A stretch of 64,000 bases of DNA from Macrostomum lignano (lineage: Eukaryota). The translations under genes and the position numbers were made by a program. A model generated the notes under the pieces. That model was given only the letters and a program-made list of their open reading frames with translations, did not search any database and was not told where the DNA came from. This document shows positions 5,676-48,900 of this stretch, in pieces (the first letter of the stretch is position 1; every line of letters begins with the position of its first letter). The stretch lies in assembly GCA_002269645.1 (NCBI GenBank), contig NIVC01003369.1, positions 1 through 64,000 of the forward strand, written 5' to 3'.

Positions 5676-8036
5676 TTTATCAACTACACAATGTCAACCA
5701 CAGCTATAGCAAAAATTATATATAGGCTACAAAGATGGCAAAAAACCTAAGTATATCTTAAACAAATTATTGAAATATTTAATTGGTTGACTGACAAAAA
5801 CAAATGGTATGGGCTATTACTACAATTTTTTCTTATTAATGGTTACTAAAAAGCCAAAAGTAAACTGTAATATTAAAAATTACTATAGGTAACTTTAGTA
5901 TTTAGTATCCTAGTTACATAGGTAACTTTTAAGTCAAACAATTGAAAATATAAGCACCCTAAAGCTGAAAGGCCAAAGCAATATATTAAAGTAAGAAAAG
6001 ATATTTATAGTTACTAAGAATAAATAATAAGGTAAATCATGAAACAGATTATAAAACAATGTGCCCAATGTGTATATTAAGAAGTCTCAGTAATTAAAAA
6101 ATCAAAACTATACTTAAACTTGGAATCTTTAAGCGTTGCACAAGGTAAAATGTCATTCATTAAATATCTAAAAATTAAATAGTTAAAATTAAATTTAACG
6201 ACTTAATGAGCTGGTCATGGACCAGCTGCAGAAGCGAAGTGGTCAAAGCCAAAAGGATATAAAATTCTATGGTTGATATGCTTCTAAAGTTTCTAAAAGA
6301 ATGGTCAACTGGTAGTAAATACTAACCGTCGACTACTTTAAAAACTTTTTTGGGCAAAATAGTATCTGTATATCAATCATACAGCTCACAGCTTGCCTTG
6401 TTCTATTTCTCGCAAACTTGCAAACTGTACAAAAGCTCTAAAAGCTTTTCTTAGGTCAGTTATTTTTTTAGACTCCTGAAAGCGAAAATTTTCGTGTGTA
6501 AAATATATTATATTTTTAAAATATTATCCTTAATTAAAACTTGTTTATTAAAAATCTAAATGCAGTATTAAAAAAAAAACTTTAAAAGACAAAAAATATT
6601 GTTAATCTATGCTAACACCGAAAATTTTATTTATGCCTCGTGCCTTTGTCGATTAGTTTCTGCCTCATGCGATCTATAGACATAGTTGCTACGCCAACGC
6701 TATGTAACACAATAGATCAATGAATCAACACACCAAACATTCTTACTTTGTATTATCATCTGTGTGCATGCGTGCGACACTTCACAAAGCTAAGCCTAAA
6801 GAAAGGGCCGATTAAATCCAACAGTGTAACAAAATAGATCCTTAAACCAAAGGCCTAAACAACAGCAAGGCAAGATAATCAAGATTAGGCTTAAACTTAG
6901 TTTGCAGTGATCAGTGGGTCCCGTCTAGTCTAGTCTAGTAACTATACTATTATAATTATGTAATATTTTAATTACTTTAAATGAATGTATGTAATTTATA
7001 AGCCTTTTAATAGTGTTGAGACTCCATAGAAATTTTGAAAGATTTTTTCTATTCCAGTTAATAGGGGCCTAATGATAAACCTTATTTAATTTGCCTGGGG
7101 CTAGGCCTAGCCTCCTAAGGCTAAGCTAAGGCTAGGTATAAAGACACTTGCTTTTAATTAATCTTGTCAAATAATAGAAAAATTAATAAAACTTTGTAGG
7201 CCCTTATCTTGTATCTTAACTTGAAGTTAAATTTCAACATTTTTTTTATTATTTTAGTGATTTATTACATAATACATTTTACTAGGCTCTAGCCTCTAGG
7301 CCCTATTATTACTAATGTTAGTATTAGACTGTGTCTGTAGGCATTTGCATTAGGCCTAGGCCTATTATTGTGTTATAGGTAGGGCTACTTTTCTAATTCC
7401 TATTATTGAATATCCTATATTGTCTAAAAGATATAAAAAACAAATAAATCAATATATTACATTTGTCCTCTTTACCCTTTTAACTTTAAAAGTGTAAAAG
7501 AAAAATGAGGTTTATGATCATTTAAATGGCAAAAGGTAGCATTATTCCACAAGAGGGTCCTATCATGTTTTTGAACTTTAAGCACTTGTAATTTTTTAAC
7601 CATGTCATAATAGATAAAACAAAACTGCAAAAAGCAATCTATGTCAAACTTCTAGCTCTATATTATTCAAATAGCTAGGCCTACTTATGAATTCTAAAAC
7701 AACTGAATATATAGCAGAGCATAAAATTTGCTAGGCCTATCATTAGATCAGCAGAGCATAAAGTCTGCCATATACAAATATATTAAATATTTGAAAAGCA
7801 TGCTTTTTAAAACAAACAAAATAAAAGAAGTGTTGTGTAAAAAGTAAAAAAGCCTTATAAAAAATAAAAGAAGCATTATATAAAAAATAAATATCATGTA
7901 AAATATAAAAAAACCTTATGTCAAAAAGATTATCATTTCAAACCTAAAAAAGCATCATACAAACTAAAAAATGTAATGTTGGAAATAAAAAGCCTTATAT
8001 AAACTTGCTTTGACTCTTAGGCATGCTTGGGTACAA

Positions 8037-8178
8037 CTTAGGGATTCACCTGGCCATTTCTATTGGCAACACACATGTAAATTGCTATTGGACAGAATAG
8101 TAATCATGTGACTACTCTTAGCCAATAGCAATTTACATGTGTATGTTCCCAATAGAATCAACCGAGTGATTCTCAAGG
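8037..8178. repeat. ~140-bp imperfect fold-back (MITE-like or hairpin-RNA-like)
   Basis: Perfect 21-bp arms ACACATGTAAATTGCTATTGG / CCAATAGCAATTTACATGTGT, extended imperfectly outward and inward. Confidence 0.85.
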
Positions 8179-8280
8179 TTGCGCATATATGCTTTTAGGG
8201 GAAAGTTATTAAGATGTCAAGGCTCATGGCAAATAACAAATGTAAATAATTATGCAAATATTTTTGAGATATCAAGGCTT

Positions 8281-8330
8281 TAGGGTGAAGGTTAGGTTTA
8301 GGTTAGGTTTGGGTTATGGGTTAGGGTTAG
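8281..8330 (+). repeat. Degenerate interstitial TTAGGG-like repeats
   Basis: TAGGGTGAAGGTTAGGTTTAGGTTAGGTTTGGGTTATGGGTTAGGGTTAG. Confidence 0.6.
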
Positions 8331-9391
8331 AATGATTTCAAGGTTGATAAGAGATTTTTTAGATTTTAAGATATTTTAGAATTTAGATAAAAAAGAAAAT
8401 CAATATGCTTCTAAAAATATAAATATCTTAATAAAACTATAAAAGTCATACCAAAATAATAATTATGTTAGATGTTGACATTTATGAGATAAGAGTATAT
8501 ATTGATTTGCATTATTGTATCATAACTATATTAGTTAATGATAACTATTTAGCTAGTTAACTATTTTAGTTAATAAATTACTCAAGATACTCAATTAAGG
8601 AGATTCCTAACTTGTATAAATAATTTTTACATATATACTAAACTGTTATTCTAATTAAGATTACAATGCTAGTATATATTAATAGGTTAATTATAAATTC
8701 TAGTTAGATTGATTATATTCTCAAAAAATGTCATAGGACTAAAATATAGCAATAAAGGCTTAACTTGCATTTAGGTTATTCTAAGATTAATCTTTAGCTT
8801 ATATAGTAATTTAAAAATTTTAACATATTAAGCATTTTAACATACTAAGCATTTTAACATACTAAGCATTGAAATACTATTAACAATTAAGGTAACAAGA
8901 ATCTAAGGAATAATTAAGGTTTGTTATAGTTGGCTCATGGCTTAATTAGAAAATTGCCTAATGGCAAAAAGGAAAGTTGCTCAGATAAAATGTCACAAAA
9001 GAAGAAAGATCTAGGCCTAGCCTGATTTTTGTCACACGCCTAAATAATTTTAAAATTTTATAACTTTTTGCAGGCCTATAGTATTTCTATTCAATTTTAT
9101 ACTTTTCAATATACAAATTTGAAAGAGAATATAGGTAAAATTTTAACTTTAATTTAAATAATCCTGCTGTCATAGGTAGTAAATAGTCTTGAAACTTTAC
9201 TTTCAATGGCATCTCATTAGGGGATATATAGGAAGCAAAATTTATGGCTGGTAGATTTTCTGCAACTGTTTAAGTCCTTAAAAACGAGGCACAATCTTTA
9301 GCTTGTTTTCAATTTTTAATTTTTCAGCTGACTAAGCATCATTGCTTGGACCTTTTTTCTGAGTTCCAACAATTTTAACTGAGTTGGTAGC

Positions 9392-12300
9392 ATGGATCTA
9401 CCATACTGCGAATTGTGTAGTGAATATTTCTACACACCCATTGACTATAATGCCCACCTTGTGTCCAATGAACACTTGCAAAAGCTGCTTAGCTTTCCTG
9501 TTGGCAAGTCAGCTTCAAATCCTATGCCAGTAGGCTCTAATCAGGAAGATATAGGAGAACTTGAGCTAGTCCAGTCTGATTTTATTTATGTGTCACAGCA
9601 CACACCTCAGTTGGCACAGATCTACAAAGTCTATCAAAACCATATCAGACAAATGATACCATTTGGCATGAGCTACATACTGCTCCTTGATGCTGTTCCA
9701 CCAAGCATGTGGCAGGGCATGATCTCAGCATTGAACGAGTTCTCTGTGTCATTTCCACTGTTTGTTCAAAGTGGCTCGTCTGGTTCTCCGCCTGCTGACA
9801 AGCAGCTAATGGACTTTGTATTGGTTGTTGACATCGATCCGTCTACCACAGCCAAGCAGTTGGCTGCTTGCATTGGTGCTAGAGAGACCGATCTTGCACT
9901 GATACCTGGCGATTCTGGCTCCGACACCACTGGTTTTCTGCGCATCAGCCACTCCAAACGGCAGGTAGTGCTGGATAGAATTCGTTCGGCTCGCGTGCCA
10001 CCTCGTCAGCGTCAGATTGATGCGTTTGAACTGTGGGGACCTCGCGCTTCTTCCTATAGTGGGGCGCGTTCGCCCACTTCACCCCCGTTGCAGTCTTCAC
10101 TTGCCCAATCGCCGAAGCTTAACAAGGATGTGCCTGGACTGCTCGCATCTTTGTCGTCTAGGACAATGAAGTTAGCAGCATCGTCTACTGCTACTACATC
10201 CTCATCTGGCTTGCCACCTAAGTCTGACAGCTATCGCCCTAGCTCTCCCAGCCAAGGTGGCAGGATACCATCTACATCCCTAGGTAGCAGCGGTCGCGGC
10301 CGCAGCAGCAGCAGCAGGCATCGAGCAGACGAGAGCAGAAGCCATCGCGACAGGTCCAGGTCCAAACACGGTTCCGGATCGCGGCGCCGGTCTAGATCGC
10401 GTTCTCGAGAGCGCAGATGCAGCCGAAGCCGCAGTCGCCAACGAGGTCATAGTCGAAGTAGGAAAGACCCCCAGCGAGATCAGGATCGCAATCGCGACCG
10501 AGATACTCGCAGTGACCGCGGCCCCGACCGTAATTCTGAGCAGGGCAGCGGCTATAAGCGTCGTGGTAGGCGAAGTTCGTTCTCCATGCACGAAGCTGCT
10601 GAGGAGCAGGAGGATGACTACGATGAGACGCCGTCTTGCTATCTGGAGCGCACTTGGTCAATCAAATTTGGCGGTATGCCATACCTTCGAATCTCAGGAT
10701 TCGATCCAGAGGTAGATACAGTCGACTTGGTTGACGCCGTCTGCAGCCGAATTGACGGTATAGAAAGCATTTACGCATTTACCCACCCTAAGGGTTTGAG
10801 AAAGAGTGTTATTTGCAACTTAAGCGAACAGACACCTATGCCCTCGGTTAATCAAGTCAAGGACAAGATTGGTGACCTGTGCAGTAACGAGCATCTGTTT
10901 GCACAGGACTATACAGAAGAGGCATTTCATCAAATGAAGTTTAATCTTCCGCATACATTTTTCTTTGTTCCCGTAACTAAGACGCGAGCTTTTGAGCCCA
11001 TGTTTCTATTAATTTGGAATATACCAGGCAATGTGCATCCGAATCACATTCTGTACAACATGCGTAGGTCTATGCCCAGCGCACGCAGTTTTAACTGTCC
11101 ACGACTATTTCGGAAGTCATATAAGCAAGGCCGATTCAAGAGCAACGCAATTCAATTGAACTGTGGCTACGCCGTTGCTAGGTTCAACAGCTCCGAAGAC
11201 TGCACCGTAATGATGCAAAGACTCGAAGAAGCTGCCGAGGAGGAGTTGCAGGCTGTATTTTCAAGCGGTAAAGTAAAGTTCTCGTTCGTATGCATGCAAG
11301 AGACTTGCTTGATTCCGCCATTTTCCTTTCCCTGTCACAACTTTCTTCATTGGGACCTCGATTCCGACTGGGATAGCATGTGTCCACAAGACTCTTTGCC
11401 TGACAGGCCTTATGTACCGTTTGTGTGCAACTGCCACACCGACTCCATGCCGATAGCACCACACGCTTCGGCTCTAGATGTCGTCGCCAAACATATTGTT
11501 GAACAGCTCGCGGTCGATGGTCCTTCTGTTGTGTGCCAGAAGTTGACCGAACTGCTTAAGCTCGAGGACAGCTGTCCAAAGAAATTTGCATGCGTCGAAG
11601 ACCGGCCCGCTTCGGATCGCGTGCCCCCTATCGAGCTGGGCAGTGTTCAGCTCGGATCGGCCAGTAGTTATTGGTGTTTGCTTTACGGGCCCGACATATA
11701 CTACACTGCAAGAGGCTTTCCATTGAGTATGGACTCATTCGAAATCGAAGAGATCGTGAAGCGAACTTGCAAAGCTTACTGCATCTACGTGCACATTTAT
11801 CCTCAGCCGGTGCCTCAAGTGCTGACAAAACAAGCCGTGTTTCGCTGCTCACCCGCTGCGACGAGTTCGTCCATGTTCTCAGCTACGCGATCGCTTCAAA
11901 TAAAGCTTAACGAAGAGATGGAGCGTCTTAATATACAGCTGCCGGACAACATTTTTGTGAGCGAATGGAGCTATCGATCTTGGGACAAGTTCAAGCACTT
12001 GCGCCCGTTTATGTTACCATTCTGCCCCGTGCCGAACGGCTACAGGAAGCCGCACTTCATCCTAGTGTGGAACATCAACTCCGAGTTGGGCAAGCACGTC
12101 TTGGTGCGAAACTTCCTTAAGAAGTATCCGCAAGTGCGCAGCGTCTTTTCGCCGCATCTCCAACCAGCTCAGGTCTGCCGCAACTGCGAGTTCTGCGTGC
12201 TGCGCTTCGACAACCCCGATGATTGCGTGCGGACCTATGCATCGATGCGAATCATGACAGAGCAAGAGCTGCAGGCTCTGTGCCCCAGGTCAGACATTCG

Positions 12301-12610
12301 CTTTATCCTGTGCCGCATGGAGGAGACCTGCTACATCCGACCGTTTCTATTTCCGTGCCACAATTTCTTCTTCTGGTACGGCCGTAACGATGAAGGTCAG
12401 ACGAACAACGGCGACAGGCTGTTTGTTGAAAGTTGGTCCCGTCGGTTTGACTGCGTCTGCCACCCCTACTGCGAGGCCTTGACCCCTGGCGGACCGCAGC
12501 TGCTTCGCTTTGCGCGAATGGTGCACACGGCCGTTGAAAAATCTACGTGCGAAGCTGTCAAGAACTGCCTGCTGATGTATATCGAGGCCACGCAAGATGC
12601 GACCAAATGA
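9392..12610 (+). CDS. Intronless 1072-aa protein: N-terminal matrin/U1-type C2H2 zinc finger, RS-rich region, several degenerate RRM-like domains in an internal duplication
   Basis: 3.2-kb uninterrupted ORF. C-x2-C-x12-H-x5-H at aa 6-28; SRSRSRERRCSRSRSR tract; duplicated segment ETCLIPPFSFPCHNFLHW / ETCYIRPFLFPCHNFFFW. Acceptor TTTTTTCAG at 9320-9328 lies upstream of the ATG. Confidence 0.9.
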   Translation: MDLPYCELCSEYFYTPIDYNAHLVSNEHLQKLLSFPVGKSASNPMPVGSNQEDIGELELVQSDFIYVSQHTPQLAQIYKVYQNHIRQMIPFGMSYILLLDAVPPSMWQGMISALNEFSVSFPLFVQSGSSGSPPADKQLMDFVLVVDIDPSTTAKQLAACIGARETDLALIPGDSGSDTTGFLRISHSKRQVVLDRIRSARVPPRQRQIDAFELWGPRASSYSGARSPTSPPLQSSLAQSPKLNKDVPGLLASLSSRTMKLAASSTATTSSSGLPPKSDSYRPSSPSQGGRIPSTSLGSSGRGRSSSSRHRADESRSHRDRSRSKHGSGSRRRSRSRSRERRCSRSRSRQRGHSRSRKDPQRDQDRNRDRDTRSDRGPDRNSEQGSGYKRRGRRSSFSMHEAAEEQEDDYDETPSCYLERTWSIKFGGMPYLRISGFDPEVDTVDLVDAVCSRIDGIESIYAFTHPKGLRKSVICNLSEQTPMPSVNQVKDKIGDLCSNEHLFAQDYTEEAFHQMKFNLPHTFFFVPVTKTRAFEPMFLLIWNIPGNVHPNHILYNMRRSMPSARSFNCPRLFRKSYKQGRFKSNAIQLNCGYAVARFNSSEDCTVMMQRLEEAAEEELQAVFSSGKVKFSFVCMQETCLIPPFSFPCHNFLHWDLDSDWDSMCPQDSLPDRPYVPFVCNCHTDSMPIAPHASALDVVAKHIVEQLAVDGPSVVCQKLTELLKLEDSCPKKFACVEDRPASDRVPPIELGSVQLGSASSYWCLLYGPDIYYTARGFPLSMDSFEIEEIVKRTCKAYCIYVHIYPQPVPQVLTKQAVFRCSPAATSSSMFSATRSLQIKLNEEMERLNIQLPDNIFVSEWSYRSWDKFKHLRPFMLPFCPVPNGYRKPHFILVWNINSELGKHVLVRNFLKKYPQVRSVFSPHLQPAQVCRNCEFCVLRFDNPDDCVRTYASMRIMTEQELQALCPRSDIRFILCRMEETCYIRPFLFPCHNFFFWYGRNDEGQTNNGDRLFVESWSRRFDCVCHPYCEALTPGGPQLLRFARMVHTAVEKSTCEAVKNCLLMYIEATQDATK

Positions 12611-13864
12611 ATGCCTCTTGATTAATGATGCTTGCATGTACAATTCTTTAGTTAAGAATCGTGTTGTGTATTGCCGTACAAATTCTTGTTTCGCTGTTTT
12701 TACTTTTAATTCAAGTTCCCATATATTAATATTTGCAAGCTTTTCAGAATGAAATCACCGTAGCATTTGTCCCTACAACGCGATATTTAAATCATTGCTT
12801 ATAACTTTGAAGTTTAAAATTTCTATTAATTGGTAATTTAATCGTAAATCACTGGTTCAAAATATTCTCAAGCGCGCTTTCTCATTTCGCTGTCTTAATT
12901 AATTGTATCATTATCTTTTTCTTTACCTAATTGCGCTTACGAGTACTTTTGTTCATTGTTCTGTGGTTCATTCTTAGTTTTTTTCGGTTAGTGTAATATA
13001 AAATTATTGAGTTCTCACGTTGTTTTTGCGAAAGTTATGTTTATATATTGTTTAATCAAGACTGTCATTCGTGCAAAACTACGAGTCCTCGGCTCATTAG
13101 TTCAACTTTTTGATGCTTTTAAGAGTTGAATTTATGAAAAATTAATTAGCCGTCTGTTCGCTTGCGGATCCATAAATTACACTTGGTCTATTGCATGAGC
13201 ATATATTAAACAGTTTGCAATAGGCAGCGGAAGTGACCGGGTTCGAGTTGAAGTCAACTATCAGGTGTAGCAAGGTTAGAAAAGTCACTTGCTCTCGTTC
13301 TTTCTATATCGTACTTTCCTTTCAGTTGGAGAACAGTGCAAATACCGCAATAACCTATGCACTAAGTTCCCAGTTGTGTCTGAATTCTGTTACGAGAATG
13401 GCGAATCGTTCTTAAATTATTTGGTCCGTTGCTCAGCTAGGCGTTCTGTTTCATTTAATATAAATACATGCAATGCATCCACTTGCTTTGTCAACTATTT
13501 ATTTCAGTTAAGCACAGCGTTGAACTCACTGTCTTGCTGTCTTCTACCAGCTTTATTTGGTTTTAGGAGTACTCGTAGCTGAAATTTTCACTTTTCGCCA
13601 TTTTAAGCCTTTATATACTATTCAGAAATGCTAAACATTGTAGCAAGCATAGCTTGCGCATAGAAGCAATTTTTAGAAGTCTTAAAATCTGCTAAATATT
13701 CTACATTATACAATATATTGCTTGAATATTGAATCAAACTTAGCTTGTTAATTGAAAGTTCTGCTTTCAGTATTAGCTATAGCTTTAGGAAGGCATAAGA
13801 ATGAAAAACATTTGGCTTAAATGAAGAAATTTATTAATAGGCTCACTTGCACCTGCTCGGGCAG

Positions 13865-14464
13865 GAAAATTCGCAGACCTCAACGAGTAGCCGGCAGCAG
13901 CCGCAGTCTTCAGCGGCGGCTGAAGAGAGCCGCGAGCTCACCCACGAGGACATGGTGTACATGAAGAAGTGCCGGGACGAGTCCATGGTCTATGGCCAGT
14001 TGCCGCTCACCGGCCTTTTCTCAGGCTTTGTGTGGTACCGCCACCGGGCCGGCTACTACAATCACCTGCCATTCGCCGCTGTCCTTGGCCGCTACTTCTT
14101 CGCCCTGAGCACCGGCATCGTGCTCGGCCTGGTCGCCTACGTGCCGCTCTGCCTGTCCCGGGTGACCCGAGTAGACATGGTTGACAGTGTGCTGCAGGAC
14201 CGGATGCTCAAGCTGCGGTCCAACCAGCAGCTGGATGAGAATTCTCGACTTCGCGTGCCAGACATTGGGCCGAACGAGCCGTTTCGCGACCCCTATCTAA
14301 AGGCTTTGGGCTCCGAGGAAGGGTTCACAACCTACAAACAGAGGCGCGAGCTCTCCAGACAGCTGGCTCGGGAGAGGCCGAGTAACCAGCAGCAGGAGCA
14401 GCAAACTGCCCAGTTATTGCCTGCTTCTAATGAGCACTCAGAAGCTTCGCTGGCTTGGCAGTAG
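13865..14464 (+). CDS. OCIAD-like: OCIA-domain protein (OCIAD/Asrij-like); start not evident in genomic DNA
   Basis: ELTHEDMVYMKKCRDES...GIVLGLVAYVPLC resembles OCIA (LTEEE...CNDES...GKLSYVKTC), with two hydrophobic segments. Candidate acceptors at 13864 and 13876. Confidence 0.7.
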   Translation, partial: ENSQTSTSSRQQPQSSAAAEESRELTHEDMVYMKKCRDESMVYGQLPLTGLFSGFVWYRHRAGYYNHLPFAAVLGRYFFALSTGIVLGLVAYVPLCLSRVTRVDMVDSVLQDRMLKLRSNQQLDENSRLRVPDIGPNEPFRDPYLKALGSEEGFTTYKQRRELSRQLARERPSNQQQEQQTAQLLPASNEHSEASLAWQ

Positions 14465-14788: not shown

Positions 14789-15435
14789 GGTATCGCTTTT
14801 GACGCTCTAGATAAGACTTTAGACATTCAAAATAAGACTGCATAGGATCGCAAGCAAGGCCAGGCTAGCCACGGCCAGAGCAAGCCCAGTCTTGGCTGCA
14901 GGGATGGCTTGGCCATAGACTAAAAAATGGAATATCAAAATGAGAATAAGAAGAAGCTCAATATGAGACCGGGAGTGAACGTAATTTATTTGCTTTTTGG
15001 CAGTCACCATACAAACAGCTAAGGAGAAATTAGGCAATAAACAAGAAGCAGAATAGCATATCGAAATGTTTAGTCCATCAGCTAGGATGGTTGATCCATT
15101 GTTTACTGCTTCGATCAGACGCTGACGGTCTGCTGCAGGAATCGATGGTGCCATCACAGTGAAATCCAAGGGGTCAGATGCAACCCAAGGGGTGAAGAAG
15201 GAGAGCTGGCTGAGGTCAGAGGGTTAGAGCGATATCTGAAGGCTTTCACACTGAGTCTCATATTGAGCGTCTTCTTATTCTCATTTTGATATTCCATTTT
15301 TTAGTCTATGGCCAAGCCATTCCTGCAGCCGGGACTGGGCGTGCTCTGGCCGTGGCTGGCCTGGCCTTGCTTGCGATCCTATGCAGTCTTATTTTGAATG
15401 TCTGAAGTCTTATCTAGAGCGTCAAAAGCGATACC
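14789..15435. repeat. Inverted duplication: 181-bp arms (14789-14969, 15255-15435) with a 285-bp spacer
   Basis: The arms are reverse complements with only a handful of substitutions. Each carries TTTTTTAG followed by a 33-codon hydrophobic frame and a stop. Confidence 0.93.
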
Positions 15436-26568: not shown

Positions 26569-26644
26569 CACCGGCCTCGGCCTGAGCTCTGGGATTTTTT
26601 GCACCTTCTTCCCTGTTTTAGCTGCCATTCTCCTAGATCCACAG

Positions 26645-27282
26645 CTGTTGAGCCAGCCTCTCAGATCCTTAGTTGCTGGGCCAGCCTCCCGGATCCTCAG
26701 TTGCTGGGCCAGCCTCCCGGATCCTCAGTTGCTGGGCCAGCCTCCCGGATCCTCAGTTGCTGAGCCAGCCTCCCGGATCATCAGTTGCTAGGCCAGCCTC
26801 CCGGATCCTCAGTTGCTGGGCCAGCCTCCCAGATCCTCAGTTGCTGGGCCAGCCTCCCGGATCCTCAGTTGCTGGGCCAGCCTCCCAGATCCTCAGTTGC
26901 TGAGCCAGCCTCCCGGATCATCAGTTGCTAGGCCAGCCTCCCGGATCCTCAGTTGCTGGGCCAGCCTCCCAGATCCTCAGTTGCTGGGCCAGCCTCCCGG
27001 ATCCTCAGTTGCTGGGCCAGCCTCCCAGATCCTCAGTTGCTGGGCCAGCCTCCCGGATCCTCACTTGCTGGGCCAGCCTCCCGGATCCTCAGTTGCTGGG
27101 CCAGCCTCCCAGATCCTCAGTTGCTGGGCCAGCCTCCCAGATCCCCACTTGCTGGGCCAGCCTCCCGGATCCTCAGTTGCTGGGCCAGCCTCCCAGATCC
27201 TCAGTTGCTGGGCCAGCCTCCCAGATCCTCAGTTGCTGGGCCAGCCTCCCAGATCCTCAGTTGCTGGGGCAGCCTCTCAGAG
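26645..27282. repeat. 28-bp minisatellite 3' of LCMT2 (GTTGCTGGGCCAGCCTCCCAGATCCTCA)
   Basis: Directly visible; same family as 60770-61990. Confidence 0.97.
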
Positions 27283-27724
27283 CCTGAATTTTCCTCAATA
27301 TTTATGTTTTGTCTTTCCTATCAGCTCACTGCATTGGTGTTGGTTTGTATTTACTCTTTCAATTTAGTTGTTAACAGAAGAATTGATAAAGTTTATTACA
27401 ATTCTGACTTTATTTGATTTTATGTGGGGAAAGTCTGAGCATGGCTAGAGACCTGTTGCAGTTTTGCTCTTTGAACTGCGCCTGTTGAGTTTTCGTGTGG
27501 TTTCCAGTCAGTGGCAATGCAATGAAATGTGGCTTCTGCCTTCTATTTGATCAATCATGAAAAATATATCACACTCGTGTCAGGCCGTCTGCTTTCTGTT
27601 AGACTGGATTGTCTATTGTCTGTTTTGGATTCAAATATTCTATGATTTCATCTCATAGCTCTTTTTATATGTTGCATTAATGTGCTAGTTTCCCAACCGC
27701 CAGGTAATTTAAGAGCACTTATAG

Positions 27725-30889: not shown

Positions 30890-32773
30890 ATGCACGCCAT
30901 CGGAAAGCTGCAGAAGCCGAAAGTTTACCGCCTTCAGGTTGATGGCTTCGGAGCCTCGTCGGGTGAATACACCTACAGCTCCATCAGGCCGTACTTCCCC
31001 GCCAACCACCCCAACACCATGTGGATCATCAACAGGGTCCGGGCGGACGACCCAACGCCTCTGGTGAACATTCTAAAGGCCAGGAAACGCATGAACATTT
31101 TCTTCAAGTACATGTACTTTCAAATCCTGGACAGGCCGTCGCTTTACAATCCGAAAGCGCCGATGGACAAGCCGATGTTTAGCGAGAAGGCCTACCTGTT
31201 TCTCAACATCTTCGCTGTGGCGCTGTACTTCAAGTGCGAGTCCATCGCGCAGGTGCTGGCGCCGATCCGGGTCGGCAAGCTGGACAATCAGTTCAGTTAC
31301 GAGGCTCTGAGCGAAGTCTCCATCCCGCAGTACGCCAGCTACGTGCACGACCACTCATTCGGCGACCTGATGACCTTCAGCATCCCCGTGGTGATGATGC
31401 GCCGGGAGGCCTACTTTGCTATTCCATTGCTGTTTAAGTTCGGCTCCTGGGCGCCCCGCAACCAGTTCACAATATCTTACTACCGCAGACACTACAACTG
31501 CACTAAAAAGTTCAACGACTGGCTTGAGTACGCCTGGCAGCTGCTCACCGAGCGGCCCTACACCAAGATCTCCATGATGGTGTACATGCTCAACAAATCT
31601 GCGCATCAGAATTTCTACCTCGGGGACAAGGTGTTCTTCCAGCCCATTAACTGTCGCTATTACAACGCGCCCTGGGTGTCGCCGTCGCAGGACGAGCGGG
31701 CGATGATCGTGTTCAGGTCCTACCCGAGGCGCCTGCTCTGCAAGCTGTTTCTGTGCAAGGACCCGCTACGAATCCTGCCCCAGGTGGTGCCCTTCGTGCG
31801 CATGTTCCAATCTAATCGCTACTTTGTCGCTCAGACCACCCGAGCCATGAACCCGGAGTTCCGCGCCGTCATTCACAGCAGTCTGGAGGAGCGCTTTCTC
31901 AACATCTCGCCAATCTGCAACTCGAACGAGCTGAACTCTTCTGACTATGTGGAGCAGAACTCGCACAAGACTTCCATCTACGATTATGACAACATCATCG
32001 CCTTGCTCTTGTACTTTCTCGTGAAAGCCACCGATAGAAATGTCCAGTCCCTGCAGCACAGCATCGTCCAGCTTGTCATGGACATCCTCGTGGACACGAA
32101 CTTGGTTTACATATTCTCCAAGGAGCCGGCAGTCAACCTGTCGTACTACATGTCCATGCTCATCGACGGCCCGTTCATCCAGCCCATCGACCTGCAGGTC
32201 ATGCTGCGGTCAATACCGAACTACCTAGTTGGCGTCCACGACATGGACAAGTGCTTCCCGCCCTACCTGCACACATCGGGCAGCAGGTACGACAGGCAGC
32301 AGCAGTTTGCACAGAACCTGTTCAAGACTAAACTGCCCGGCCTGTGGGAGAGCGGCGCGGTCGAACAGGCCATCCAGCTGATGCTGAAATACCGCATCGA
32401 CATTGACGACACCGTGGGAGTGACCACGCTGGAGTACTGCGACTGGAAGAACGAGTACCTGACGGCCAGGCTGAAGCTCAGCCTGCAGACGATGAACCAA
32501 GAGCAGCAGACGATTCCGGCTGAGCGGGTCGACCAGCGAATGACCGCCGACGATGAGGGCGGCCACCACGGCGTCGCCCTGGGCTGGCGCGCCTACCCGC
32601 CGTTCTTCTTCCGCGACGCCAAGGAGTTCATGGTAAAGCGGCAGCGGGACGCCAGCGTCAAGAAGAAGAAGCTGCGCCGGAATTACATCGACCTGTGGAC
32701 TATGGACGAGCTGGAGGTGAAACGGCCCGGCCAGGCGAACCGCAGGCAGTCTGTTTACACTCATTCCAAGTAG
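30890..32773 (+). CDS. Intronless 627-aa protein of unknown function (helical, possibly degenerate ankyrin-like repeats)
   Basis: 1.9-kb ORF with strong C/G third-position bias like neighbouring genes; no motif confidently recognised. Confidence 0.8.
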   Translation: MHAIGKLQKPKVYRLQVDGFGASSGEYTYSSIRPYFPANHPNTMWIINRVRADDPTPLVNILKARKRMNIFFKYMYFQILDRPSLYNPKAPMDKPMFSEKAYLFLNIFAVALYFKCESIAQVLAPIRVGKLDNQFSYEALSEVSIPQYASYVHDHSFGDLMTFSIPVVMMRREAYFAIPLLFKFGSWAPRNQFTISYYRRHYNCTKKFNDWLEYAWQLLTERPYTKISMMVYMLNKSAHQNFYLGDKVFFQPINCRYYNAPWVSPSQDERAMIVFRSYPRRLLCKLFLCKDPLRILPQVVPFVRMFQSNRYFVAQTTRAMNPEFRAVIHSSLEERFLNISPICNSNELNSSDYVEQNSHKTSIYDYDNIIALLLYFLVKATDRNVQSLQHSIVQLVMDILVDTNLVYIFSKEPAVNLSYYMSMLIDGPFIQPIDLQVMLRSIPNYLVGVHDMDKCFPPYLHTSGSRYDRQQQFAQNLFKTKLPGLWESGAVEQAIQLMLKYRIDIDDTVGVTTLEYCDWKNEYLTARLKLSLQTMNQEQQTIPAERVDQRMTADDEGGHHGVALGWRAYPPFFFRDAKEFMVKRQRDASVKKKKLRRNYIDLWTMDELEVKRPGQANRRQSVYTHSK

Positions 32774-34329: not shown

Positions 34330-41427
<7,098 letters not shown>

Positions 41428-44330: not shown

Positions 44331-45234
44331 AAACAGAAAGCAGCTTAGCGCCTAGTTGGAATGAATCTGTCAGTACAGATGAAGTACTTTCTTTTTCGCG
44401 TAAATAGTCCTCTGACAAGAGTGCCTTTTGTACTTTTTTACCTAATCGCAGCTCAAGTCGTAGCCAATAAAATTCCCACAATGACGTACTGACATGCACT
44501 TGCCCACGCGGCGGAGAGAAGTTCTACGCGCTTCTGAACTTCGAGTCAGGCTCGAGCTCTCAGCATTCGGTGTGAACAACCGTCCCTGCTCACAGACCAG
44601 TCTAAAATGCATGCACGATCTCGTTAAAAACTGCTGCAGAACTCATACCCGTCTCTTCCCCTTATTTCAGAGCTCTCCAGGGCCCCAGCCCGCGTTTTAA
44701 ATCGACTGTCTGCGTCCGCTCACTTCTCAAACTTGTTCAAATAATTGCTCTTTGCCAACGCCAAGACCGAACCAATGGGAAGCGGGAAAAGCGGCGGGGA
44801 GGGTGCAGTGAGGGAGAGGTGCAGCTCGCTGGCCATGCGCTGTGAGCACGTGAACTTGTTGTTGAATACAGCGGTCGATTGAGCACTTACATTTCTTTCC
44901 CATATCTGCCCTTATCTAGTGGGCTTGTGCGCTGTTTTGCGAAACGTTTGGCGTACAAAAACTCATCTTTATAAATTAATGACTTCCTGTGCGAGTTTTT
45001 ACTCATAATAAATCAACTGCTGCGTTGGTAGAATGTGACTCAAGTGAGCGATGGATGCTGCATCACACTGATAGTGAGTTAAATGCTGCTTCATTCGGAT
45101 GAAGGTGAGAGAGTATGAGTCATGCATTTATTGCAAATCACTTGTCACAGCAAAACTTTTGCAAAATTCGTGTCCCTAGGACCCAAACTGGGCGGGCCTC
45201 TGACACAAATGGGCGCTCTTACTGGGCTTTTCGA

Positions 45235-45735
45235 CACCCAGTCTGACACCCCTGACACACAATCTGGCACCTCTGACACACAATCTGGCATCCCTGACAC
45301 ACAATCTGGCATCCCTGACACCCAATCTGGCATCTCTGACACACAATCTGGCATCCCTGACACACAATCTGGCACCTCTGACACAATCTGACACCTCTGA
45401 CACACAATCTGGCATCCCTGACACCCAATCTGGCATCCCTGACACCCAATCTGGCATCCCTGACACCCAATCTGGCATCCCTGACACCCAATCTGGCATC
45501 CCTGACACCCAATCTGGCATCCCTGACACCCAATCTGGCATCCCTGACACCCAATCTGGCATCCCTGACACACAATATAGCACCCCTGACACACAATCTA
45601 GCACCCCTGACACACAATATAGCACCCCTGACACACAATCTGGCATCCCTGACACCCAATCTGGCATCCCTGACACCCAATCTGGCATCCCTGACACACA
45701 AGCTGGCATCCCTGACACACAATCTGGCACCCCGG
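45235..45735. repeat. 21-bp minisatellite upstream of innexin (CTGACACCCAATCTGGCATCC)
   Basis: Directly visible; same family as 52740-53620. Confidence 0.96.
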
Positions 45736-45931
45736 ACCTCATTTGTGCTTGCACCAAATGCTTCAGTGAGGCCTTCAATGAGGCGCTATTTGCCCCCTGG
45801 CGCACTGGCCATCCCGATTCGAATACTCGATCGTACGCATGCACTAAAATGAGTTGCTGAATGCAATGATTTGTCAAACACCGACCCAACCGCATCCTAA
45901 AAATATTGCAGAATTGCTTTAACCAGCCGCA

Positions 45932-48900
45932 ATGATTCTTCAAGACTTCTTCACCTACATGCGGCAGGCGGAGGTGCTCAGCCACGTTGGCTTGGACGAC
46001 TTTGCCGACAAGCTGAGCTTCATCTACTCTGGTGAGTCGGCTTTGACCCCTGAGCACACGCAGTTTCACACAGGACTCAAGTACAGATGGATATTCGCAG
46101 GAAGGTTGCGTGCACCCTAGCGCTACGCCTTTGGCGACACCGTGGCACAAGCAGCAGCGAGGCAATCCTGGACATTTATTGCATTTAGAGCGCGGGATAT
46201 TGCATTCACACACACGCTCACACGGGTTGTACAGCAGCCCTGACTCTCCCATCGTCAGGAATGTACACACTTAGTAGTTCTCAAGGTCGTAAATCGCTCG
46301 ACAAGACACATTTACCGCTGACTCAGCCACAAGCATAGAACTCGAACTCGCATTGCAGTCTGGTTCCTGCTGGTCTGCAGCAGCCTCGCCACTGCCAAGA
46401 ACTACTTCGCCAGCCCGATAGTCTGCTACCTGCCCTCCATCGTGGGCTCGCACGAAGGCCAAAGCAGCTACGTGAACAGCATCTGCTACTCGGAGGGCAC
46501 CTACAATGTGCCCCCCGCCGAGTTCCTCATCGACTCCTCCGACCCGGACTGGGACCAACCGTACCGCAGCCGCAAGATTTTCTACTACCAGTGGCTTCCG
46601 CTGGTGCTCGGCCTGCAGGGCGCGCTGCTGTACAGCCCGCGCATCGTCTGGCAGGTCGCCGTGGCCCGCTGCGGCGCCGGCGTCAACCTGCTGCAGCTGG
46701 TGCGCTCGGCTCGCGAGGCCGCCGCCGAGCCGCTGGCAACGAAAGTGCCGGACGGCCGGCGAGAGAAACTTCTGAGCAGCTGCGTGAGTCAGGCGGACCT
46801 CTGGCTGGACTGCTGGGCGGCCTGCAGGTCCCGCCTGGCCGCTGCCTACCTGGCCGTCAAGTGCCTCTACGCTGGCAACGCCGTCTGCCAGCTGCTGCTG
46901 ATGGCCAGCCTGTTGCAGCTCGGCTCCTTCAACTCCAAGACCGGCCTGGCGGCCCTGCCGGTGCAGGCGGCGAGTTTCGGCGCCTCCTTGCTGGCTGATC
47001 TGGCAGCGGGTGAGAGGAGAGGGGGGAGAGGAGCTTCTCTGGGGTCTCTGAGCAAGGCTTTTCTTTGGCTTTGCTCCCCTTGTTTCAGCGCGTTATTATC
47101 AATTTCTCAGAATAGTCGCTAGCAAAGCACTGGAACGATGGACCCATCCCCGTCTGTATGTATCTAGTGAGAGAGAGAGAGAGAGAGAGAGAGAGTAGTA
47201 GTAAGTGCTGCAATTTTGCTTAAACTTCACTAGTTTGTAATGTTCAGTTGTGCTTTTTCAAAATGAATATCAATAGACTTGTAAAACCGCCACAGATACT
47301 GGCTTTAAGTGATACTTGGATGTCTATACGGCAGAGAAGCAAAGTCACGGGTAGCCAGAGGCGAGGGGGCAAGGGGGCACCCGCACAATAGGCTGACAAA
47401 GAACTACGGCACCTGATTAGGCGCACCCTTCAAAATTGTTGTGACGCCCCCAACAATGGCGCTTCTAAGACAACCTTGGGATAAGCAACAGCTGACCACT
47501 GAGCTATAACACACTAATAGTCCGGCTTCTCCCCCCACCGCAGGCAGGGACTGGCGAGCCACCGGGCTGTTCCCCAGGAGCGGCTGTTGCGCCGTGCTCA
47601 CCCGGCAGTCCTCCGGTGCCCAGCATCAGTTCGCCCAGTGCGCCCTGCCGGTGAACATGCTTCACGAGAAGCTGTTCATATTCCTGTGGTTTTGGTTCAC
47701 CTTCCTGCTGGCGATGTCGCTCATCAGCCTGGCAGTCTGGGTGGCTTGGCTCCTGCCAGTCTGTCCGGTGAAGCGAAGCGTGAAGCGGATGATCTTCCTG
47801 AGCGGCGCTCCGTGCGCCAATCCGGCAGAGAGGCGAGTCATCAGGTAGGAGGCGAGTTTGCATGGGATGCAGATTTTGTGAGGTTTGATTCTGAAGGAAA
47901 GCAACGCTGTTCTCTCCTGAGTGGGTCTTCTTGAGTGCAAAGTGGGTCTTCGTGAGTGCCAAGTGGATCTTCTTGAGTGCAGAGTGGGTCTTCTTGAGTG
48001 CCAAGTGGGTCTTCTTGAGTGCAAAGTGGGTCTTCTTGAGTGCAGAGTGGGTCTTCTTGAGTGCCAAGTGGGTCTTCTTGAGTGCAAAGTGGGTCTTCTT
48101 GAGTGCAAAGTGGGTCTTCCTAAGTGCAAAGTGGGTCTTCTTGAATGCAAAGTGGATCTTCTTGAGTGCAAAGTGGGTCTTCTTGAGTGCAAAGTGGGTC
48201 TTCTTGAGTGCAAAGTGGGTCTTCTTGAGTGCAAAGTGGGTCTTCTTGAGTGCAAAGTGGATCTTCTTGAGTGCAAAGTGGGTCTTCTTGAGTGCAAAGT
48301 GGGTCTTCTTGAGTGCAAAGTGGATCTTCTTGAGTGCAAAGTGGGTCTTCTTGAGTGCAGAGTGGGTCTTCTTGAGTGCAAAGTGGGTCTTCTTGAGTGC
48401 AAAGTGGGTCTCCCTGAGTGCAAAGTGGTTCTTCTTGAGTGCAACGTGGGTCTTCCTGGGTTTCAAAGTACATCTTGGCTTTTCAAGGTGCAACGCGGTC
48501 CAACCAGTGTGAAAAGTTGTTGTGGGATTTTCAGTGTCTAAACTGAGCCTTGTTACAATGTAAAAATAGTCTTTTATGATGGCAAAAGGCCTCTGACGGC
48601 TCCATAATTGTGTGCTCTGTCTGATAAAGATGCGCCTTCCGAATGCTAGGATGCAATAGACACGGAAAGCTGATCTAGGAGCTTGAGCACTTACCTTTCA
48701 CGAACGTCAAACCTGGCAATTCGCAAAGTATAATGATACTTTATACGAGTACTTCAAGTATGCACACCACCCGATCATTGGAAGTCAGGGCAGATGGACG
48801 CTTTGCGCGAAACCGTGTCTGCCTACGGATCCGTGAGAGCGAGTGACGTGTGAATGGGCAGTCTTAACTGGCTCTGGATCCACTGCTGCCAGCAGTTGCA

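What the first reader, a model, noticed from the sequence alone, without database searches (positions are those of the whole stretch)
9392..12610. Intronless 1072-aa ZnF-RS protein with a duplicated RRM-RRM-Cys/His module
Seen: matrin-type C2H2 finger; two further RRM-like stretches (YILLLDAVPP, FVLVVDIDPSTTAKQL...GFLRI); an RS tract; then two ~240-aa repeats. Each repeat has an RRM-like pair (PYLRISGF / FLLIWNI...CGYAVARF; IYYTARGF / FILVWNI...CEFCVLRF) ending in ETCxIxPFxFPCHNF...CxCH. Known: matrin fingers, RS tracts and RRMs are typical of splicing and RNP factors. Inference: the PCHNF...CxCH unit may be an undescribed metal-binding domain appended to quasi-RRMs. I recognise no family with this architecture. 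It lacks introns and arrays unlike its neighbours, suggesting a retrogene or a lineage-specific RNA-processing or germline factor.
Basis: partly seen in the sequence, partly recalled or inferred. Interest (0 to 1): 0.72.

Follow-up and report, generated by a model that had tools for sequence, protein, structure and literature searches.

The report
Flatworm-only SR-like multi-RRM protein
This is a real, selectively constrained gene of the flatworm Macrostomum lignano that encodes an RNA-binding-type protein (zinc finger, arginine/serine tract, up to six RRM-like folds) found so far only in this species, with a conserved cysteine/histidine tail after two of the RRMs that matches no described domain but is not yet shown to bind metal.

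Summary
Window 9392..12610 (+) is one uninterrupted 1072-codon ORF with all the motifs quoted. Its C-terminal half is a true internal duplication (BLASTP E=4e-23). The source is Macrostomum lignano, where three 98.8-99.3% identical copies lie in the same gene neighbourhood, all intact, with pN/pS about 0.13 (0.03-0.12 in the repeats). An exhaustive HMMER search of 1.84 billion representatives found only four relatives, all M. lignano paralogues. No domain reaches the Pfam cut-off. AlphaFold2 models give beta-alpha-beta-beta-alpha-beta pairs. For the repeat unit, Foldseek returns almost only tandem-RRM proteins (Pub1, HuR, Sxl, PABP, NONO/SFPQ; E about 1e-5). The N-terminal pair is weaker (IMP3 RRM12, E=1.4e-3). 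The N-terminal finger fits the U1/matrin/JAZ class but scores below threshold. The RS core is 56% RS/SR. The tail C-x8-9-[C/A]-H-x24-34-C-x-C-H is conserved in all seven module copies and matches nothing in Pfam or PDB, but it is modelled with low confidence, so zinc binding remains a hypothesis. There are no retrogene or transposon hallmarks. Best reading: a lineage-restricted SR-like RNA-processing protein, a new variant of a known kind. Moderate interest.

The parts
9392..12610 (+). Complete single-exon CDS, 1072 aa plus stop (M. lignano; other copies are PAA88622.1 and PAA56975.1)
   Evidence: pN/pS 0.12-0.15 among the three copies
9404..9475 (+). U1-like/matrin/JAZ-type C2H2 zinc finger, aa 5-28 (C6, C9, H22, H28; C-x2-C-x12-H-x5-H)
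   Evidence: Pfam zf-C2H2_jaz 19.3 bits (cut-off 22.6) and zf-met 16.9 (cut-off 21.2). Best PDB hits are ZFa, Bud20 and Prp9, in register, E 0.018-0.8. AF2 did not fold it (pLDDT 23-37).
9563..9772 (+). N-domain ferredoxin-like/RRM-like unit a, aa 58-127 (contains YILLLDAVPP)
   Evidence: AF2 strands/helices E58-67 H74-80 E85-91 E94-99 H104-115 E120-127, pLDDT about 80. Foldseek IMP3 RRM12 E=1.4e-3, with ACT-like folds also listed.
9800..10042 (+). N-domain ferredoxin-like/RRM-like unit b, aa 137-217 (FVLVVDIDP...GFLRI...FELW)
   Evidence: AF2 E137-148 H154-161 E168-171 E179-184 H187-199 E210-217. Conserved in the two N-domain copies of P0004.
10052..10666 (+). Low-complexity linker, presumably disordered, aa 221-425 (S 23%, R 18%)
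   Evidence: Composition. It holds most of the amino-acid differences between copies and has the highest pN/pS, 0.22-0.43.
10259..10591 (+). RS/RD tract, aa 290-400; core aa 308-357 is 56% RS/SR dipeptides
   Evidence: The only PDB similarity is to the RD repeats of NELF-E, a low-complexity match.
10667..11641 (+). Repeat unit R1, aa 426-750
10682..10912 (+). R1 RRM-like domain a, aa 431-507 (PYLRISGF...; no RNP consensus)
   Evidence: AF2 E10-16 H22-32 E36-43 E50-56 H65-75 E82-86 in unit numbering, pLDDT about 65-79. Foldseek tandem-RRM hits cover both domains.
11003..11296 (+). R1 RRM-like domain b, aa 538-635 (RNP2-like FLLIWNIP, RNP1-like CGYAVARF)
   Evidence: AF2 pLDDT 78-92. The profile aligns in register with SRSF2, SRp46 and Prp24 RRMs, E 0.15-1. 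Foldseek E about 1e-5.
11300..11461 (+). R1 Cys/His tail, aa 637-690: ETC639-x8-C648-H649-x29-C679-x-C681-H682
   Evidence: Invariant C, H, C, C, H in all module copies. No Pfam or PDB match. AF2 shows a beta-hairpin straight after beta4, then a low-confidence loop.
11465..11569 (+). R1 C-terminal helix pair, aa 692-726
   Evidence: AF2 H271-288 and H290-305 in unit numbering, pLDDT about 53
11687..12607 (+). Repeat unit R2, aa 766-1072
11696..11965 (+). R2 RRM-like domain a, aa 769-858 (IYYTARGF...), placed by alignment to R1
   Evidence: Not modelled separately.
12053..12316 (+). R2 RRM-like domain b, aa 888-975 (HFILVWNI...NCEFCVLRF)
12323..12487 (+). R2 Cys/His tail, aa 978-1032: ETC980-x8-C989-H990-x30-C1021-x-C1023-H1024
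12488..12595 (+). R2 C-terminal helical region, aa 1033-1068, shared with the R2-type paralogues (P0006 and the middle module of P0004)
   Evidence: Alignments. Helices are inferred by homology to R1.

Best explanation
The ORF is a functional, lineage-restricted gene of Macrostomum lignano. It encodes an SR-like RNA-binding protein with this order of parts: a U1/matrin/JAZ-type C2H2 finger; two degenerate RRM-like domains; an RS/RD low-complexity tract of about 200 aa; then two tandem copies of a module of about 315 aa made of RRM-like domain a, RRM-like domain b, a Cys/His tail and a helix pair.

Most likely mechanism (inferred): the RS tract takes the protein to nuclear speckles and the splicing machinery, as in SR and SR-related proteins. 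The finger and the two 'b' RRMs contact RNA. The 'b' RRMs keep an RNP1-like G-(Y/F)-x-(V/L)-x-R-F and an RNP2-like L-L-I-W-N-L. The 'a' RRMs and the N-terminal pair lack RNP aromatics and probably serve as packing or protein-contact modules. The tail continues the sheet of RRM b as a beta-hairpin. Its invariant Cys and His residues probably hold one zinc ion that clamps the distal CxCH segment and the following helices back onto the RRM.

Shown here: the gene is real and under purifying selection; the duplication; the RRM-type folds in the repeat unit; conservation of the tail; absence of relatives outside M. lignano in the collections searched. Inferred: RNA binding, nuclear pre-mRNA processing role, zinc binding.
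For: Real and constrained: three intact 1072-codon copies in conserved synteny (UBC, this gene, OCIA-like, ADSL, LCM). pN/pS is 0.12-0.15 overall and 0.03-0.12 in the repeats, with 14 synonymous against 3 non-synonymous variable codons in aa 426-1072. The Mlig_3_7 gene models are built from RNA-seq transcript assemblies (PMC5730564).

Fold: AF2 of R1 has pTM 0.62 and RRM b at pLDDT 78-92. Most of the Foldseek PDB top 50 are tandem-RRM proteins (Pub1 E=1.4e-5; HuR, Sxl, PABP, hnRNP A1/A2B1, raver1, NONO/SFPQ/PSPC1), with a few other ferredoxin-like folds. The viral library returns giant-virus RRM proteins. The module profile aligns in register with SRSF2, SRp46 and Prp24 RRMs at RNP2 and RNP1. 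N-domain: two beta-alpha-beta-beta-alpha-beta units at pLDDT about 80, with IMP3 RRM12 as top hit.

Finger: correct spacing and U1/JAZ-class best hits. RS core: 56% RS/SR over 50 aa.

Tail: C, H, C, C, H invariant in seven module copies that are only 25-39% identical. 6 of 13 Cys/His columns are invariant against 9 of 102 others, Fisher p=0.0018.
Against: No RRM model reaches the Pfam gathering score (best RRM_1 E=0.076 for one paralogue), and the PDB profile hits are not significant (E>=0.15). Only one of the three canonical RNP aromatic positions is kept in RRM b and none in RRM a, so RNA binding may be non-canonical or absent. For the N-domain, ACT and other ferredoxin-like folds score nearly as well as RRMs, and no hit reaches E<=1e-3. 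The Cys of PCHN is Ala in P0007. The alignments are shallow (6 and 3 sequences). No expression, localisation or binding data were found.
Confidence: 0.55

Rival explanations
1. The RRM-like domains are mainly protein-protein modules. The two tandem units fold back on each other into an intramolecular pseudo-dimer, as DBHS proteins (NONO/SFPQ/PSPC1) dimerise through RRM2, NOPS and a coiled coil. The protein would then be a nuclear-body scaffold and not a sequence-specific RNA binder.
For: DBHS chains are among the best Foldseek hits and are the only ones aligned over more than 300 columns, covering both RRMs plus the extension and helices. RNP aromatics are largely lost. Each unit ends in a helix pair. 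An RS/low-complexity tract is present.
Against: TM-scores to DBHS chains are low (0.15-0.22), so the relative domain arrangement is not reproduced. There is no Pfam NOPS hit. No model of R1 and R2 together could be made. DBHS proteins bind nucleic acid as well, so this rival is not exclusive of the best explanation.
Confidence: 0.2
2. It is a cytoplasmic mRNA translation or stability regulator of the CPEB kind (two RRMs followed by a zinc-binding Cys/His domain), acting in germline or stem cells.
For: Each unit has the same order of parts as the CPEB C-terminal region: RRM, RRM, Cys/His segment (the CPEB architecture is from my own knowledge). Flatworm germline biology relies on RRM proteins (elav-like and boule-like genes in M. 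lignano, titles listed).
Against: No sequence similarity to CPEB in Pfam or PDB searches. No CPEB entry is in the Foldseek top 50. The tail has 5-6 conserved ligands spaced C-x8-9-[C/A]-H-x24-34-C-x-C-H, unlike the eight-ligand ZZ domain. A strong RS tract argues for nuclear speckle targeting.
Confidence: 0.1
3. It is a retrogene or a transposon-derived (domesticated) ORF, which would explain the lack of introns.
For: The 3.2-kb CDS has no intron, while the species averages 4.9 introns per gene (PMC5730564). One paralogue model (P0004) starts with a stretch that looks like Gag, a CCHC knuckle and a DSG protease (UniProt name 'CCHC-type domain-containing').
Against: No A or T run of 8 or more within 8000-14000 and no flanking direct or inverted repeats. 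All three copies sit in the same neighbourhood of intron-containing genes, as expected of homeologous or redundant segments of this neopolyploid assembly and not of dispersed insertions. No RT, integrase or transposase domain. Viral fold hits are RRM proteins only. The Gag-like part of P0004 abuts the family's own N-terminal finger and is best read as a fused gene model.
Confidence: 0.05
4. It is a chance or decaying ORF with no function.
For: No homologue outside one species and no Pfam domain above threshold.
Against: 1072 stop-free codons are retained in three diverged copies, with pN/pS about 0.13 and flank divergence of 2-4%. Four divergent paralogues conserve the same motifs. Well-packed folds are predicted.
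Confidence: 0.02

Closest known systems
SR and SR-related splicing proteins (e.g. SRSF2; definition of Manley and Krainer 2010, own knowledge)
   Same: RRM-type domains upstream of an RS tract of at least 50 aa with more than 40% RS/SR (56% in aa 308-357). The module profile's best PDB sequence hits are the SRSF2 and SRp46 RRMs, in register.
   Different: The N-terminal RRM-like pair has no RNP consensus. The RS tract is internal, followed by 650 aa of further domains. There is an added zinc finger. There is no significant sequence similarity to any SR protein.
Matrin-3 / RBM20 / ZNF638 group (RRMs combined with matrin-type fingers, with an RS region in RBM20 and ZNF638; own knowledge)
   Same: The same parts list: a U1/matrin-type C2H2 finger, RRM folds and an RS tract.
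   Different: Different order and number of parts, no detectable sequence homology, and none of them carries the Cys/His tail.
DBHS proteins NONO/SFPQ/PSPC1 (RRM1-RRM2-NOPS-coiled coil; PDB 3sde, 7pu5, 6wmz)
   Same: Each repeat unit is RRM, RRM, sheet-extending segment, helices. These are the longest Foldseek alignments (301-334 columns, E about 2-9e-5).
   Different: Low TM-scores (0.15-0.22), no NOPS sequence match, no long coiled coil. The unit is duplicated within one chain, whereas DBHS proteins pair between chains.
CPEB C-terminal region (RRM1-RRM2-ZZ zinc domain; own knowledge)
   Same: Two RRMs followed directly by a conserved Cys/His segment.
   Different: Different ligand number and spacing, no sequence or top-50 structural match, and CPEBs have no RS tract.
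JAZ/ZFa/ZFR and U1C/SF3a (Prp9, Prp11) U1-like zinc fingers
   Same: C-x2-C-x12-H-x5-H spacing, with an aromatic before the first Cys and a conserved Phe after the second. The best Pfam and PDB hits fall in this class.
   Different: A single finger that scores below both Pfam cut-offs. dsRNA binding is untested.

Membership tests
RRM (Pfam PF00076 / RRM fold) | beta1-alpha1-beta2-beta3-alpha2-beta4 fold | tested here: met
   AF2 of R1 gives this topology twice (unit residues 10-86 and 117-214), and Foldseek top hits are RRM proteins at E about 1e-5, prob about 1.0. The N-domain also shows it twice, but with E>=1.4e-3 and ACT-like folds mixed in.
RRM (Pfam PF00076 / RRM fold) | RNP1 ([KR]-G-[FY]-[GA]-[FY]-[ILV]-x-[FY]) and RNP2 ([ILV]-[FY]-[ILV]-x-N-L) consensus | tested here: inconclusive
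   The 'b' domains have C-G-[YF]-[AC]-V-x-R-F and L-L-I-W-N-L. G, aromatic 3, R7, F8 and N-L are kept, but aromatic 5 and the RNP2 aromatic are lost. The 'a' domains and the N-domain have no recognisable RNP motifs.
RRM (Pfam PF00076 / RRM fold) | Score at or above the Pfam gathering threshold | tested here: not met
   No RRM_1 hit for the window protein. The best among paralogue units is E=0.076.
Mei2-type RRM (Pfam PF04059 RRM_2) | Match to the RRM_2 model | tested here: not met
   No hit at E<=10 for any of six module copies. UniProt's name 'RRM_2 domain-containing' for P0005 probably reflects another database's label.
U1-like/matrin/JAZ C2H2 zinc finger (PF12171, PF12874) | C-x2-C-x12-H-x5-6-H spacing with flanking aromatics | tested here: met
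   Y5-C6-x2-C9-x3-F13-x8-H22-x5-H28. In register with ZFa, Bud20 and Prp9 fingers.
U1-like/matrin/JAZ C2H2 zinc finger (PF12171, PF12874) | Score at or above the Pfam gathering threshold | tested here: not met
   19.3 bits against 22.6 (zf-C2H2_jaz) and 16.9 against 21.2 (zf-met).
Classical SR proteins | RS domain of at least 50 aa with more than 40% RS/SR content | tested here: met
   aa 308-357 is 56% RS/SR.
Classical SR proteins | One or two canonical N-terminal RRMs with the RS domain at the C-terminus; function in splicing | tested here: not met
   The N-terminal RRM-like pair is degenerate and the RS tract is internal. Splicing function is not testable here. Best filed as SR-like or SR-related.
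DBHS (NONO/SFPQ/PSPC1) | NOPS domain and coiled coil after RRM2; obligate dimer | tested here: not met
   No NOPS Pfam hit. Structural alignment is long but TM is 0.15-0.22. Dimerisation is not testable here.
CPEB | ZZ-type domain with eight zinc ligands after RRM2; CPEB RRM sequence signature | tested here: not met
   The tail has 5-6 conserved Cys/His with different spacing. No sequence or top-50 fold match.
Zinc-binding domain (generic) | At least four invariant Cys/His ligands, brought together in the fold and binding metal | tested here: inconclusive
   C, H, C, C, H are invariant, plus C183 of RRM b (Fisher p=0.0018). Metal binding needs experiment.
Processed retrogene | Poly(A) remnant, target-site duplication, intron-containing parent elsewhere | tested here: not met
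   No A or T run of 8 or more in 8000-14000 and no flanking repeats. Conserved synteny of all three copies. The parent gene could not be searched genome-wide.
Transposable-element protein | RT, integrase, transposase or capsid domains; terminal repeats; dispersed copies | tested here: not met
   No such Pfam domain, no terminal repeats, viral fold library gives only RRM proteins, and copies are syntenic.

The most novel reading that the evidence does not exclude
The segment E-[TIV]-C-x-[ILV]-P-x1-2-F-x-[FV]-P-[CA]-H-N...[FY]-x-C-x-C-H, together with the invariant Cys at the start of helix alpha2 of the preceding RRM, is a previously undescribed zinc-stabilised extension of the RRM fold. It would define a Macrostomum (or macrostomorph) specific family of SR-like proteins. 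In this protein the two RRM-RRM-Zn-helix units would pack as an intramolecular DBHS-like pseudo-dimer that acts in flatworm-specific RNA processing such as spliced-leader trans-splicing or germline/neoblast mRNA control.
Probability: 0.3. Interest if true: 0.55.

Novelty: new variant of a known kind. Interest (0 to 1): 0.4.

Why it matters
RRM proteins with RS tracts are central to splicing control, but nearly all studied ones belong to pan-eukaryotic families. This is a multi-paralogue RRM/RS family under purifying selection that is invisible to Pfam and so far confined to one flatworm lineage. It carries a conserved Cys/His appendage that no domain library describes. If the appendage binds zinc and shapes the RNA-binding surface, it adds a new way of elaborating the RRM. 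If the protein acts in neoblasts or germline, it offers a lineage-specific handle on RNA processing in a regeneration model with transgenesis and RNAi. If not, it is simply one more orphan RNA-binding-type protein, now with a proper domain annotation.

Tried and rejected
1. Full-length word-indexed homologue search returned only the protein itself, with the 8000-candidate list probably saturated by RS-rich proteins. Repeating it with the RS-free C-terminal 652 aa also returned only itself.

2. The same tool with the module alignment A1 returned nothing, not even the query's own protein. I treat this as a limit of the word index, not as evidence.

3. Pfam scans of the whole protein, of paralogues and of each module copy at E<=10 gave no family above threshold. 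The NAF and AMA-1 hits at E about 0.1 are noise.

4. PDB sequence searches: the whole protein hit only the NELF-E RD-repeat low complexity. The tail-only profile hit only spondin-1 and XRCC3 at E 0.3-1.3, which is noise.

5. Profile-profile comparison of the N-domain with the repeat unit gave E=0.048 and probability 1%. The idea that the N-domain is a third, tail-less copy of the RRM pair stays unproven.

6. The Mei2 RRM_2 lead from a UniProt name was not supported.

7. Retrogene and TE hallmarks are absent.

8. A metagenome scan with PF[SLQ]FPCHN gave 94 pattern matches, none a relative.

9. Literature and supplement look-ups for the accessions and the gene IDs Mlig019659 and Mlig032687 found nothing. 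One supplement is stored truncated, so expression remains open.

10. Rfam and tRNA scans of the window found nothing.


Full report
**1. The observation**

Window 9392..12610 (+) is a single ATG-to-TGA reading frame of 1072 codons. A stop lies four codons upstream of the ATG, so the frame cannot extend 5' without splicing.

The coding body is about 51% G+C and sits between flanks of 29-42% G+C. No tandem array lies inside it, although the window carries more than 25 minisatellite and microsatellite arrays.

The claimed internal repeat is real. aa 500-702 aligns with aa 852-1044 at 27% identity, BLASTP E=4e-23, and tblastn extends the match to about 281-307 residues.

The RS tract has 24 RS/SR and 9 RD/DR dipeptides in aa 290-400. 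Its best 50-aa window (aa 308-357) is 56% RS/SR.

**2. Source, copies and selection**

The protein is identical in length and 98.8-99.3% identical in sequence to two GenBank proteins of Macrostomum lignano, PAA88622.1 and PAA56975.1. Both are named 'hypothetical protein'.

Both other copies lie in the same neighbourhood as in the window: UBC on the minus strand, then this gene, an OCIA-like gene, adenylosuccinate lyase and an LCM-domain gene. The published assembly is known to be redundant because the sequenced line is a neopolyploid with extra large chromosomes (PMC5730564). The three copies are therefore homeologous or allelic segments, not dispersed insertions.

Among them pS is 0.02-0.04 and pN 0.003-0.005. 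pN/pS is 0.12-0.15 overall, 0.22-0.43 in the low-complexity linker and 0.03-0.12 in the repeat region, where 14 synonymous and 3 non-synonymous variable codons are seen. Flanking DNA differs by 2-4%. The counts are small but consistent: this is a protein-coding gene under purifying selection, strongest on the repeats.

The Mlig_3_7 gene models were derived from RNA-seq transcript assemblies, which is indirect evidence of transcription. I could not find direct expression values.

**3. Relatives**

An exhaustive phmmer search with the RS-free aa 421-1072 against 1.84 billion representative proteins found four relatives besides the protein itself. They are P0004 (E=3e-46), P0005 (3e-37), P0006 (3e-23) and P0007 (3e-4). 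All are UniProt entries of M. lignano.

The word-indexed searches and an environmental-contig scan added nothing. Within the collections available, the family is confined to this species. Because M. lignano is the only macrostomorph with an annotated proteome, this may be a sampling limit.

The paralogues carry the same module. By bit score, P0005, the C-terminal module of P0004 and P0007 resemble R1 more than R2. P0006 and the middle module of P0004 resemble R2 more. The R1/R2 split therefore seems older than the split between paralogues (inference).

P0004 also repeats the N-terminal region twice: aa 463-671 matches aa 8-220 at E=1.5e-12, and there is a second weaker copy. P0004 begins with a stretch that looks like Gag, a CCHC knuckle and a DSG protease. 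I read it as a fused gene model of a retroelement fragment and two adjacent paralogues.

**4. Domains**

Pfam gives only sub-threshold hits for the N-terminal finger: zf-C2H2_jaz at 19.3 bits against a cut-off of 22.6, and zf-met at 16.9 against 21.2. The spacing C-x2-C-x12-H-x5-H and the best PDB hits (ZFa, Bud20, Prp9; E 0.018-0.8, in register) place it in the U1-like/matrin/JAZ class. No RRM model reaches threshold in the protein or in any module copy.

A profile of six module copies (A1) finds as its best PDB sequences the RRMs of SRSF2, SRp46 and Prp24. The hits are not significant (E 0.15-1), but LLIWNL aligns with RNP2 and CGYAVLRF with RNP1.

AlphaFold2 on this alignment gave a model of R1 with mean pLDDT 64.7 and pTM 0.62. 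It contains two beta-alpha-beta-beta-alpha-beta domains, at unit residues 10-86 (pLDDT about 65-79) and 117-214 (pLDDT 78-92). Foldseek against the PDB returned 54 matches at E<=1e-3. The top 50 are dominated by tandem-RRM proteins: Pub1, HuR/HuD, Sxl, PABP, hnRNP A1/A2B1, CUGBP, raver1 and the DBHS proteins. A few other ferredoxin-like folds also appear. The viral library gave giant-virus RRM proteins. TM-scores are low (0.15-0.37) because the relative position of the two domains differs, so the support is for the fold of each domain and their tandem order, not for a particular arrangement.

A model of aa 1-225 (three-sequence alignment, pTM 0.66) folds aa 57-220 at pLDDT about 80 into two more beta-alpha-beta-beta-alpha-beta units. 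The finger is left unfolded. Its best matches are IMP3 RRM12 (E=1.4e-3, prob 0.99), a spliceosomal chain, raver1 and DBHS. ACT-type and other ferredoxin-like proteins score similarly. A profile-profile test for homology between the N-domain and the repeat unit was not significant.

**5. The Cys/His tail**

In all seven module copies, which are only 25-39% identical overall, the segment after beta4 of RRM b reads E-[TIV]-C-x-[ILV]-P-x1-2-F-x-[FV]-P-[CA]-H-N-[LF]-x2-W, then 24-34 variable residues, then [FY]-x-C-x-C-H-[PT]-x5-6-P.

The invariant Cys/His residues, in R1 numbering, are C639, H649, C679, C681 and H682, plus C604 at the start of helix alpha2 of RRM b. C648 of 'PCHN' is Ala in P0007, so it is unlikely to be an essential ligand. 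Cys/His columns are enriched among invariant columns: 6 of 13 against 9 of 102, Fisher p=0.0018.

AF2 places T638-I641 and F644-P647 as a beta-hairpin directly continuing beta4, followed by a short helix at C648-F651, a low-confidence loop, the CxCH segment and two helices. pLDDT here is 40-65.

Neither Pfam nor a tail-only profile against PDB sequences finds any relative. The tail is thus a conserved, undescribed sequence element with the hallmarks of a small zinc site (C-H-C-C/H). Zinc binding is not demonstrated, and I could not inspect coordinates to check ligand geometry.

**6. How it most likely works**

Shown: the gene is real, constrained and lineage-restricted; the C-terminal half is an old tandem duplication of an RRM-RRM-tail-helix unit; the folds are RRM-type.

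Inferred from what is established for these domain classes:
- The RS tract directs the protein to the nuclear splicing machinery.
- The U1/JAZ-type finger and the two 'b' RRMs contact RNA. The 'b' RRMs keep Gly2, aromatic 3, Arg7 and Phe8 of RNP1 and the N-L of RNP2, and they have a conserved Trp on beta1.
- The RNP-less 'a' domains and the N-terminal pair act as packing or protein-contact domains.
- The tail extends the sheet of RRM b and is clamped by a metal ion, modifying or partly covering the RNA-binding face.

I put this at about 0.55. The main rival (about 0.2) is that the units are chiefly protein-protein modules forming a DBHS-like intramolecular pseudo-dimer. The two are not mutually exclusive. 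A CPEB-like cytoplasmic role (about 0.1), a retrogene or TE origin (about 0.05) and a non-functional ORF (about 0.02) are less likely, for the reasons given under the rivals.

**7. Comparison with the known, and novelty**

The parts list (matrin-class finger, RRM folds, RS tract) is that of SR-related proteins and of the Matrin-3/RBM20/ZNF638 group. The unit order RRM-RRM-extension-helices recalls DBHS proteins, and RRM-RRM-Cys/His recalls CPEB. Membership in each of these families fails at least one tested defining feature (see the membership table).

The fold class and probable general function are known. The family, the six-fold RRM-like architecture with an internal RS tract, and the Cys/His tail are not described. 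I rate it a new variant of a known kind, of moderate interest (0.4). The interest rests mainly on the tail and on the lineage restriction, and neither can be settled with the data at hand.

Noticed in passing
window 30890-32773 (+): A second long uninterrupted ORF (627 aa, complex composition) with no Pfam hit at E<=10 and no PDB sequence match. Possibly another orphan single-exon gene.
   Followed up: partly
window 35948-39491: (TCTA)124, then 2.6 copies of a 272-bp unit, then (CTAT)584, a microsatellite of about 2.3 kb. This explains the three overlapping 'ORFs' of about 800 aa at 37099-39595 and the extreme GC/AT skew.
   Followed up: yes
window 26630-27285 and 60768-61989: Two arrays 34 kb apart are built from the same 28-nt unit (CTCCCAGATCCTCAGTTGCTGGGCCAGC, rotated). 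At least 20 other 16-49-nt minisatellites fill 2-63 kb, in line with the 15% tandem-repeat content reported for this genome.
   Followed up: partly
window 45176-46270 (-): The Pfam hit 'LbR_Ice_bind' (E=4e-13) for this ORF lies on a 21-nt tandem array (45233-45737). It is a translation artefact of the repeat, not an antifreeze-type gene.
   Followed up: yes
window 14789-14979 and 15245-15435: Inverted repeat with 191-nt arms, 94% complementary, 265 nt apart, between the OCIA-like gene and adenylosuccinate lyase. Possibly a foldback or MITE-like element.
   Followed up: no
window 9320-9327: A polypyrimidine tract ending in AG (tttttcag) 65 nt upstream of the ATG. It is a candidate 3' splice or spliced-leader trans-splice acceptor, so 'intronless' is established for the CDS only (38.8% of M. 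lignano genes are trans-spliced).
   Followed up: no
window 10280-10591 (-): A 103-aa antisense ORF lies entirely opposite the RS/RD-coding tract. It is Ala/Thr/Ser-rich and is a compositional by-product.
   Followed up: yes
P0004 (UniProt A0A1I8I8L7), aa 1-455 and beyond: This 2098-aa paralogue model starts with a Gag/CCHC/DSG-protease-like stretch. It then carries the family's finger and N-domain, a long acidic linker and an R2-type module, followed by a second N-domain and an R1-type module. It is probably a fusion of a retroelement fragment with two adjacent paralogues. Its C-terminal RRM b differs from P0005 in a way that looks like a frameshifted stretch.
   Followed up: partly
P0005 and P0006 (UniProt names): The automatic names 'RRM_2 domain-containing' and 'FZ domain-containing' are not reproduced by Pfam here. 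The Frizzled label for P0006 is probably a spurious match to the Cys pattern of the tail.
   Followed up: partly
tool behaviour: The word-indexed search with alignment A1 did not return even the window's own protein, and the single-sequence search missed the four paralogues that exhaustive HMMER found. Negative results from that tool are weak for this family.
   Followed up: no
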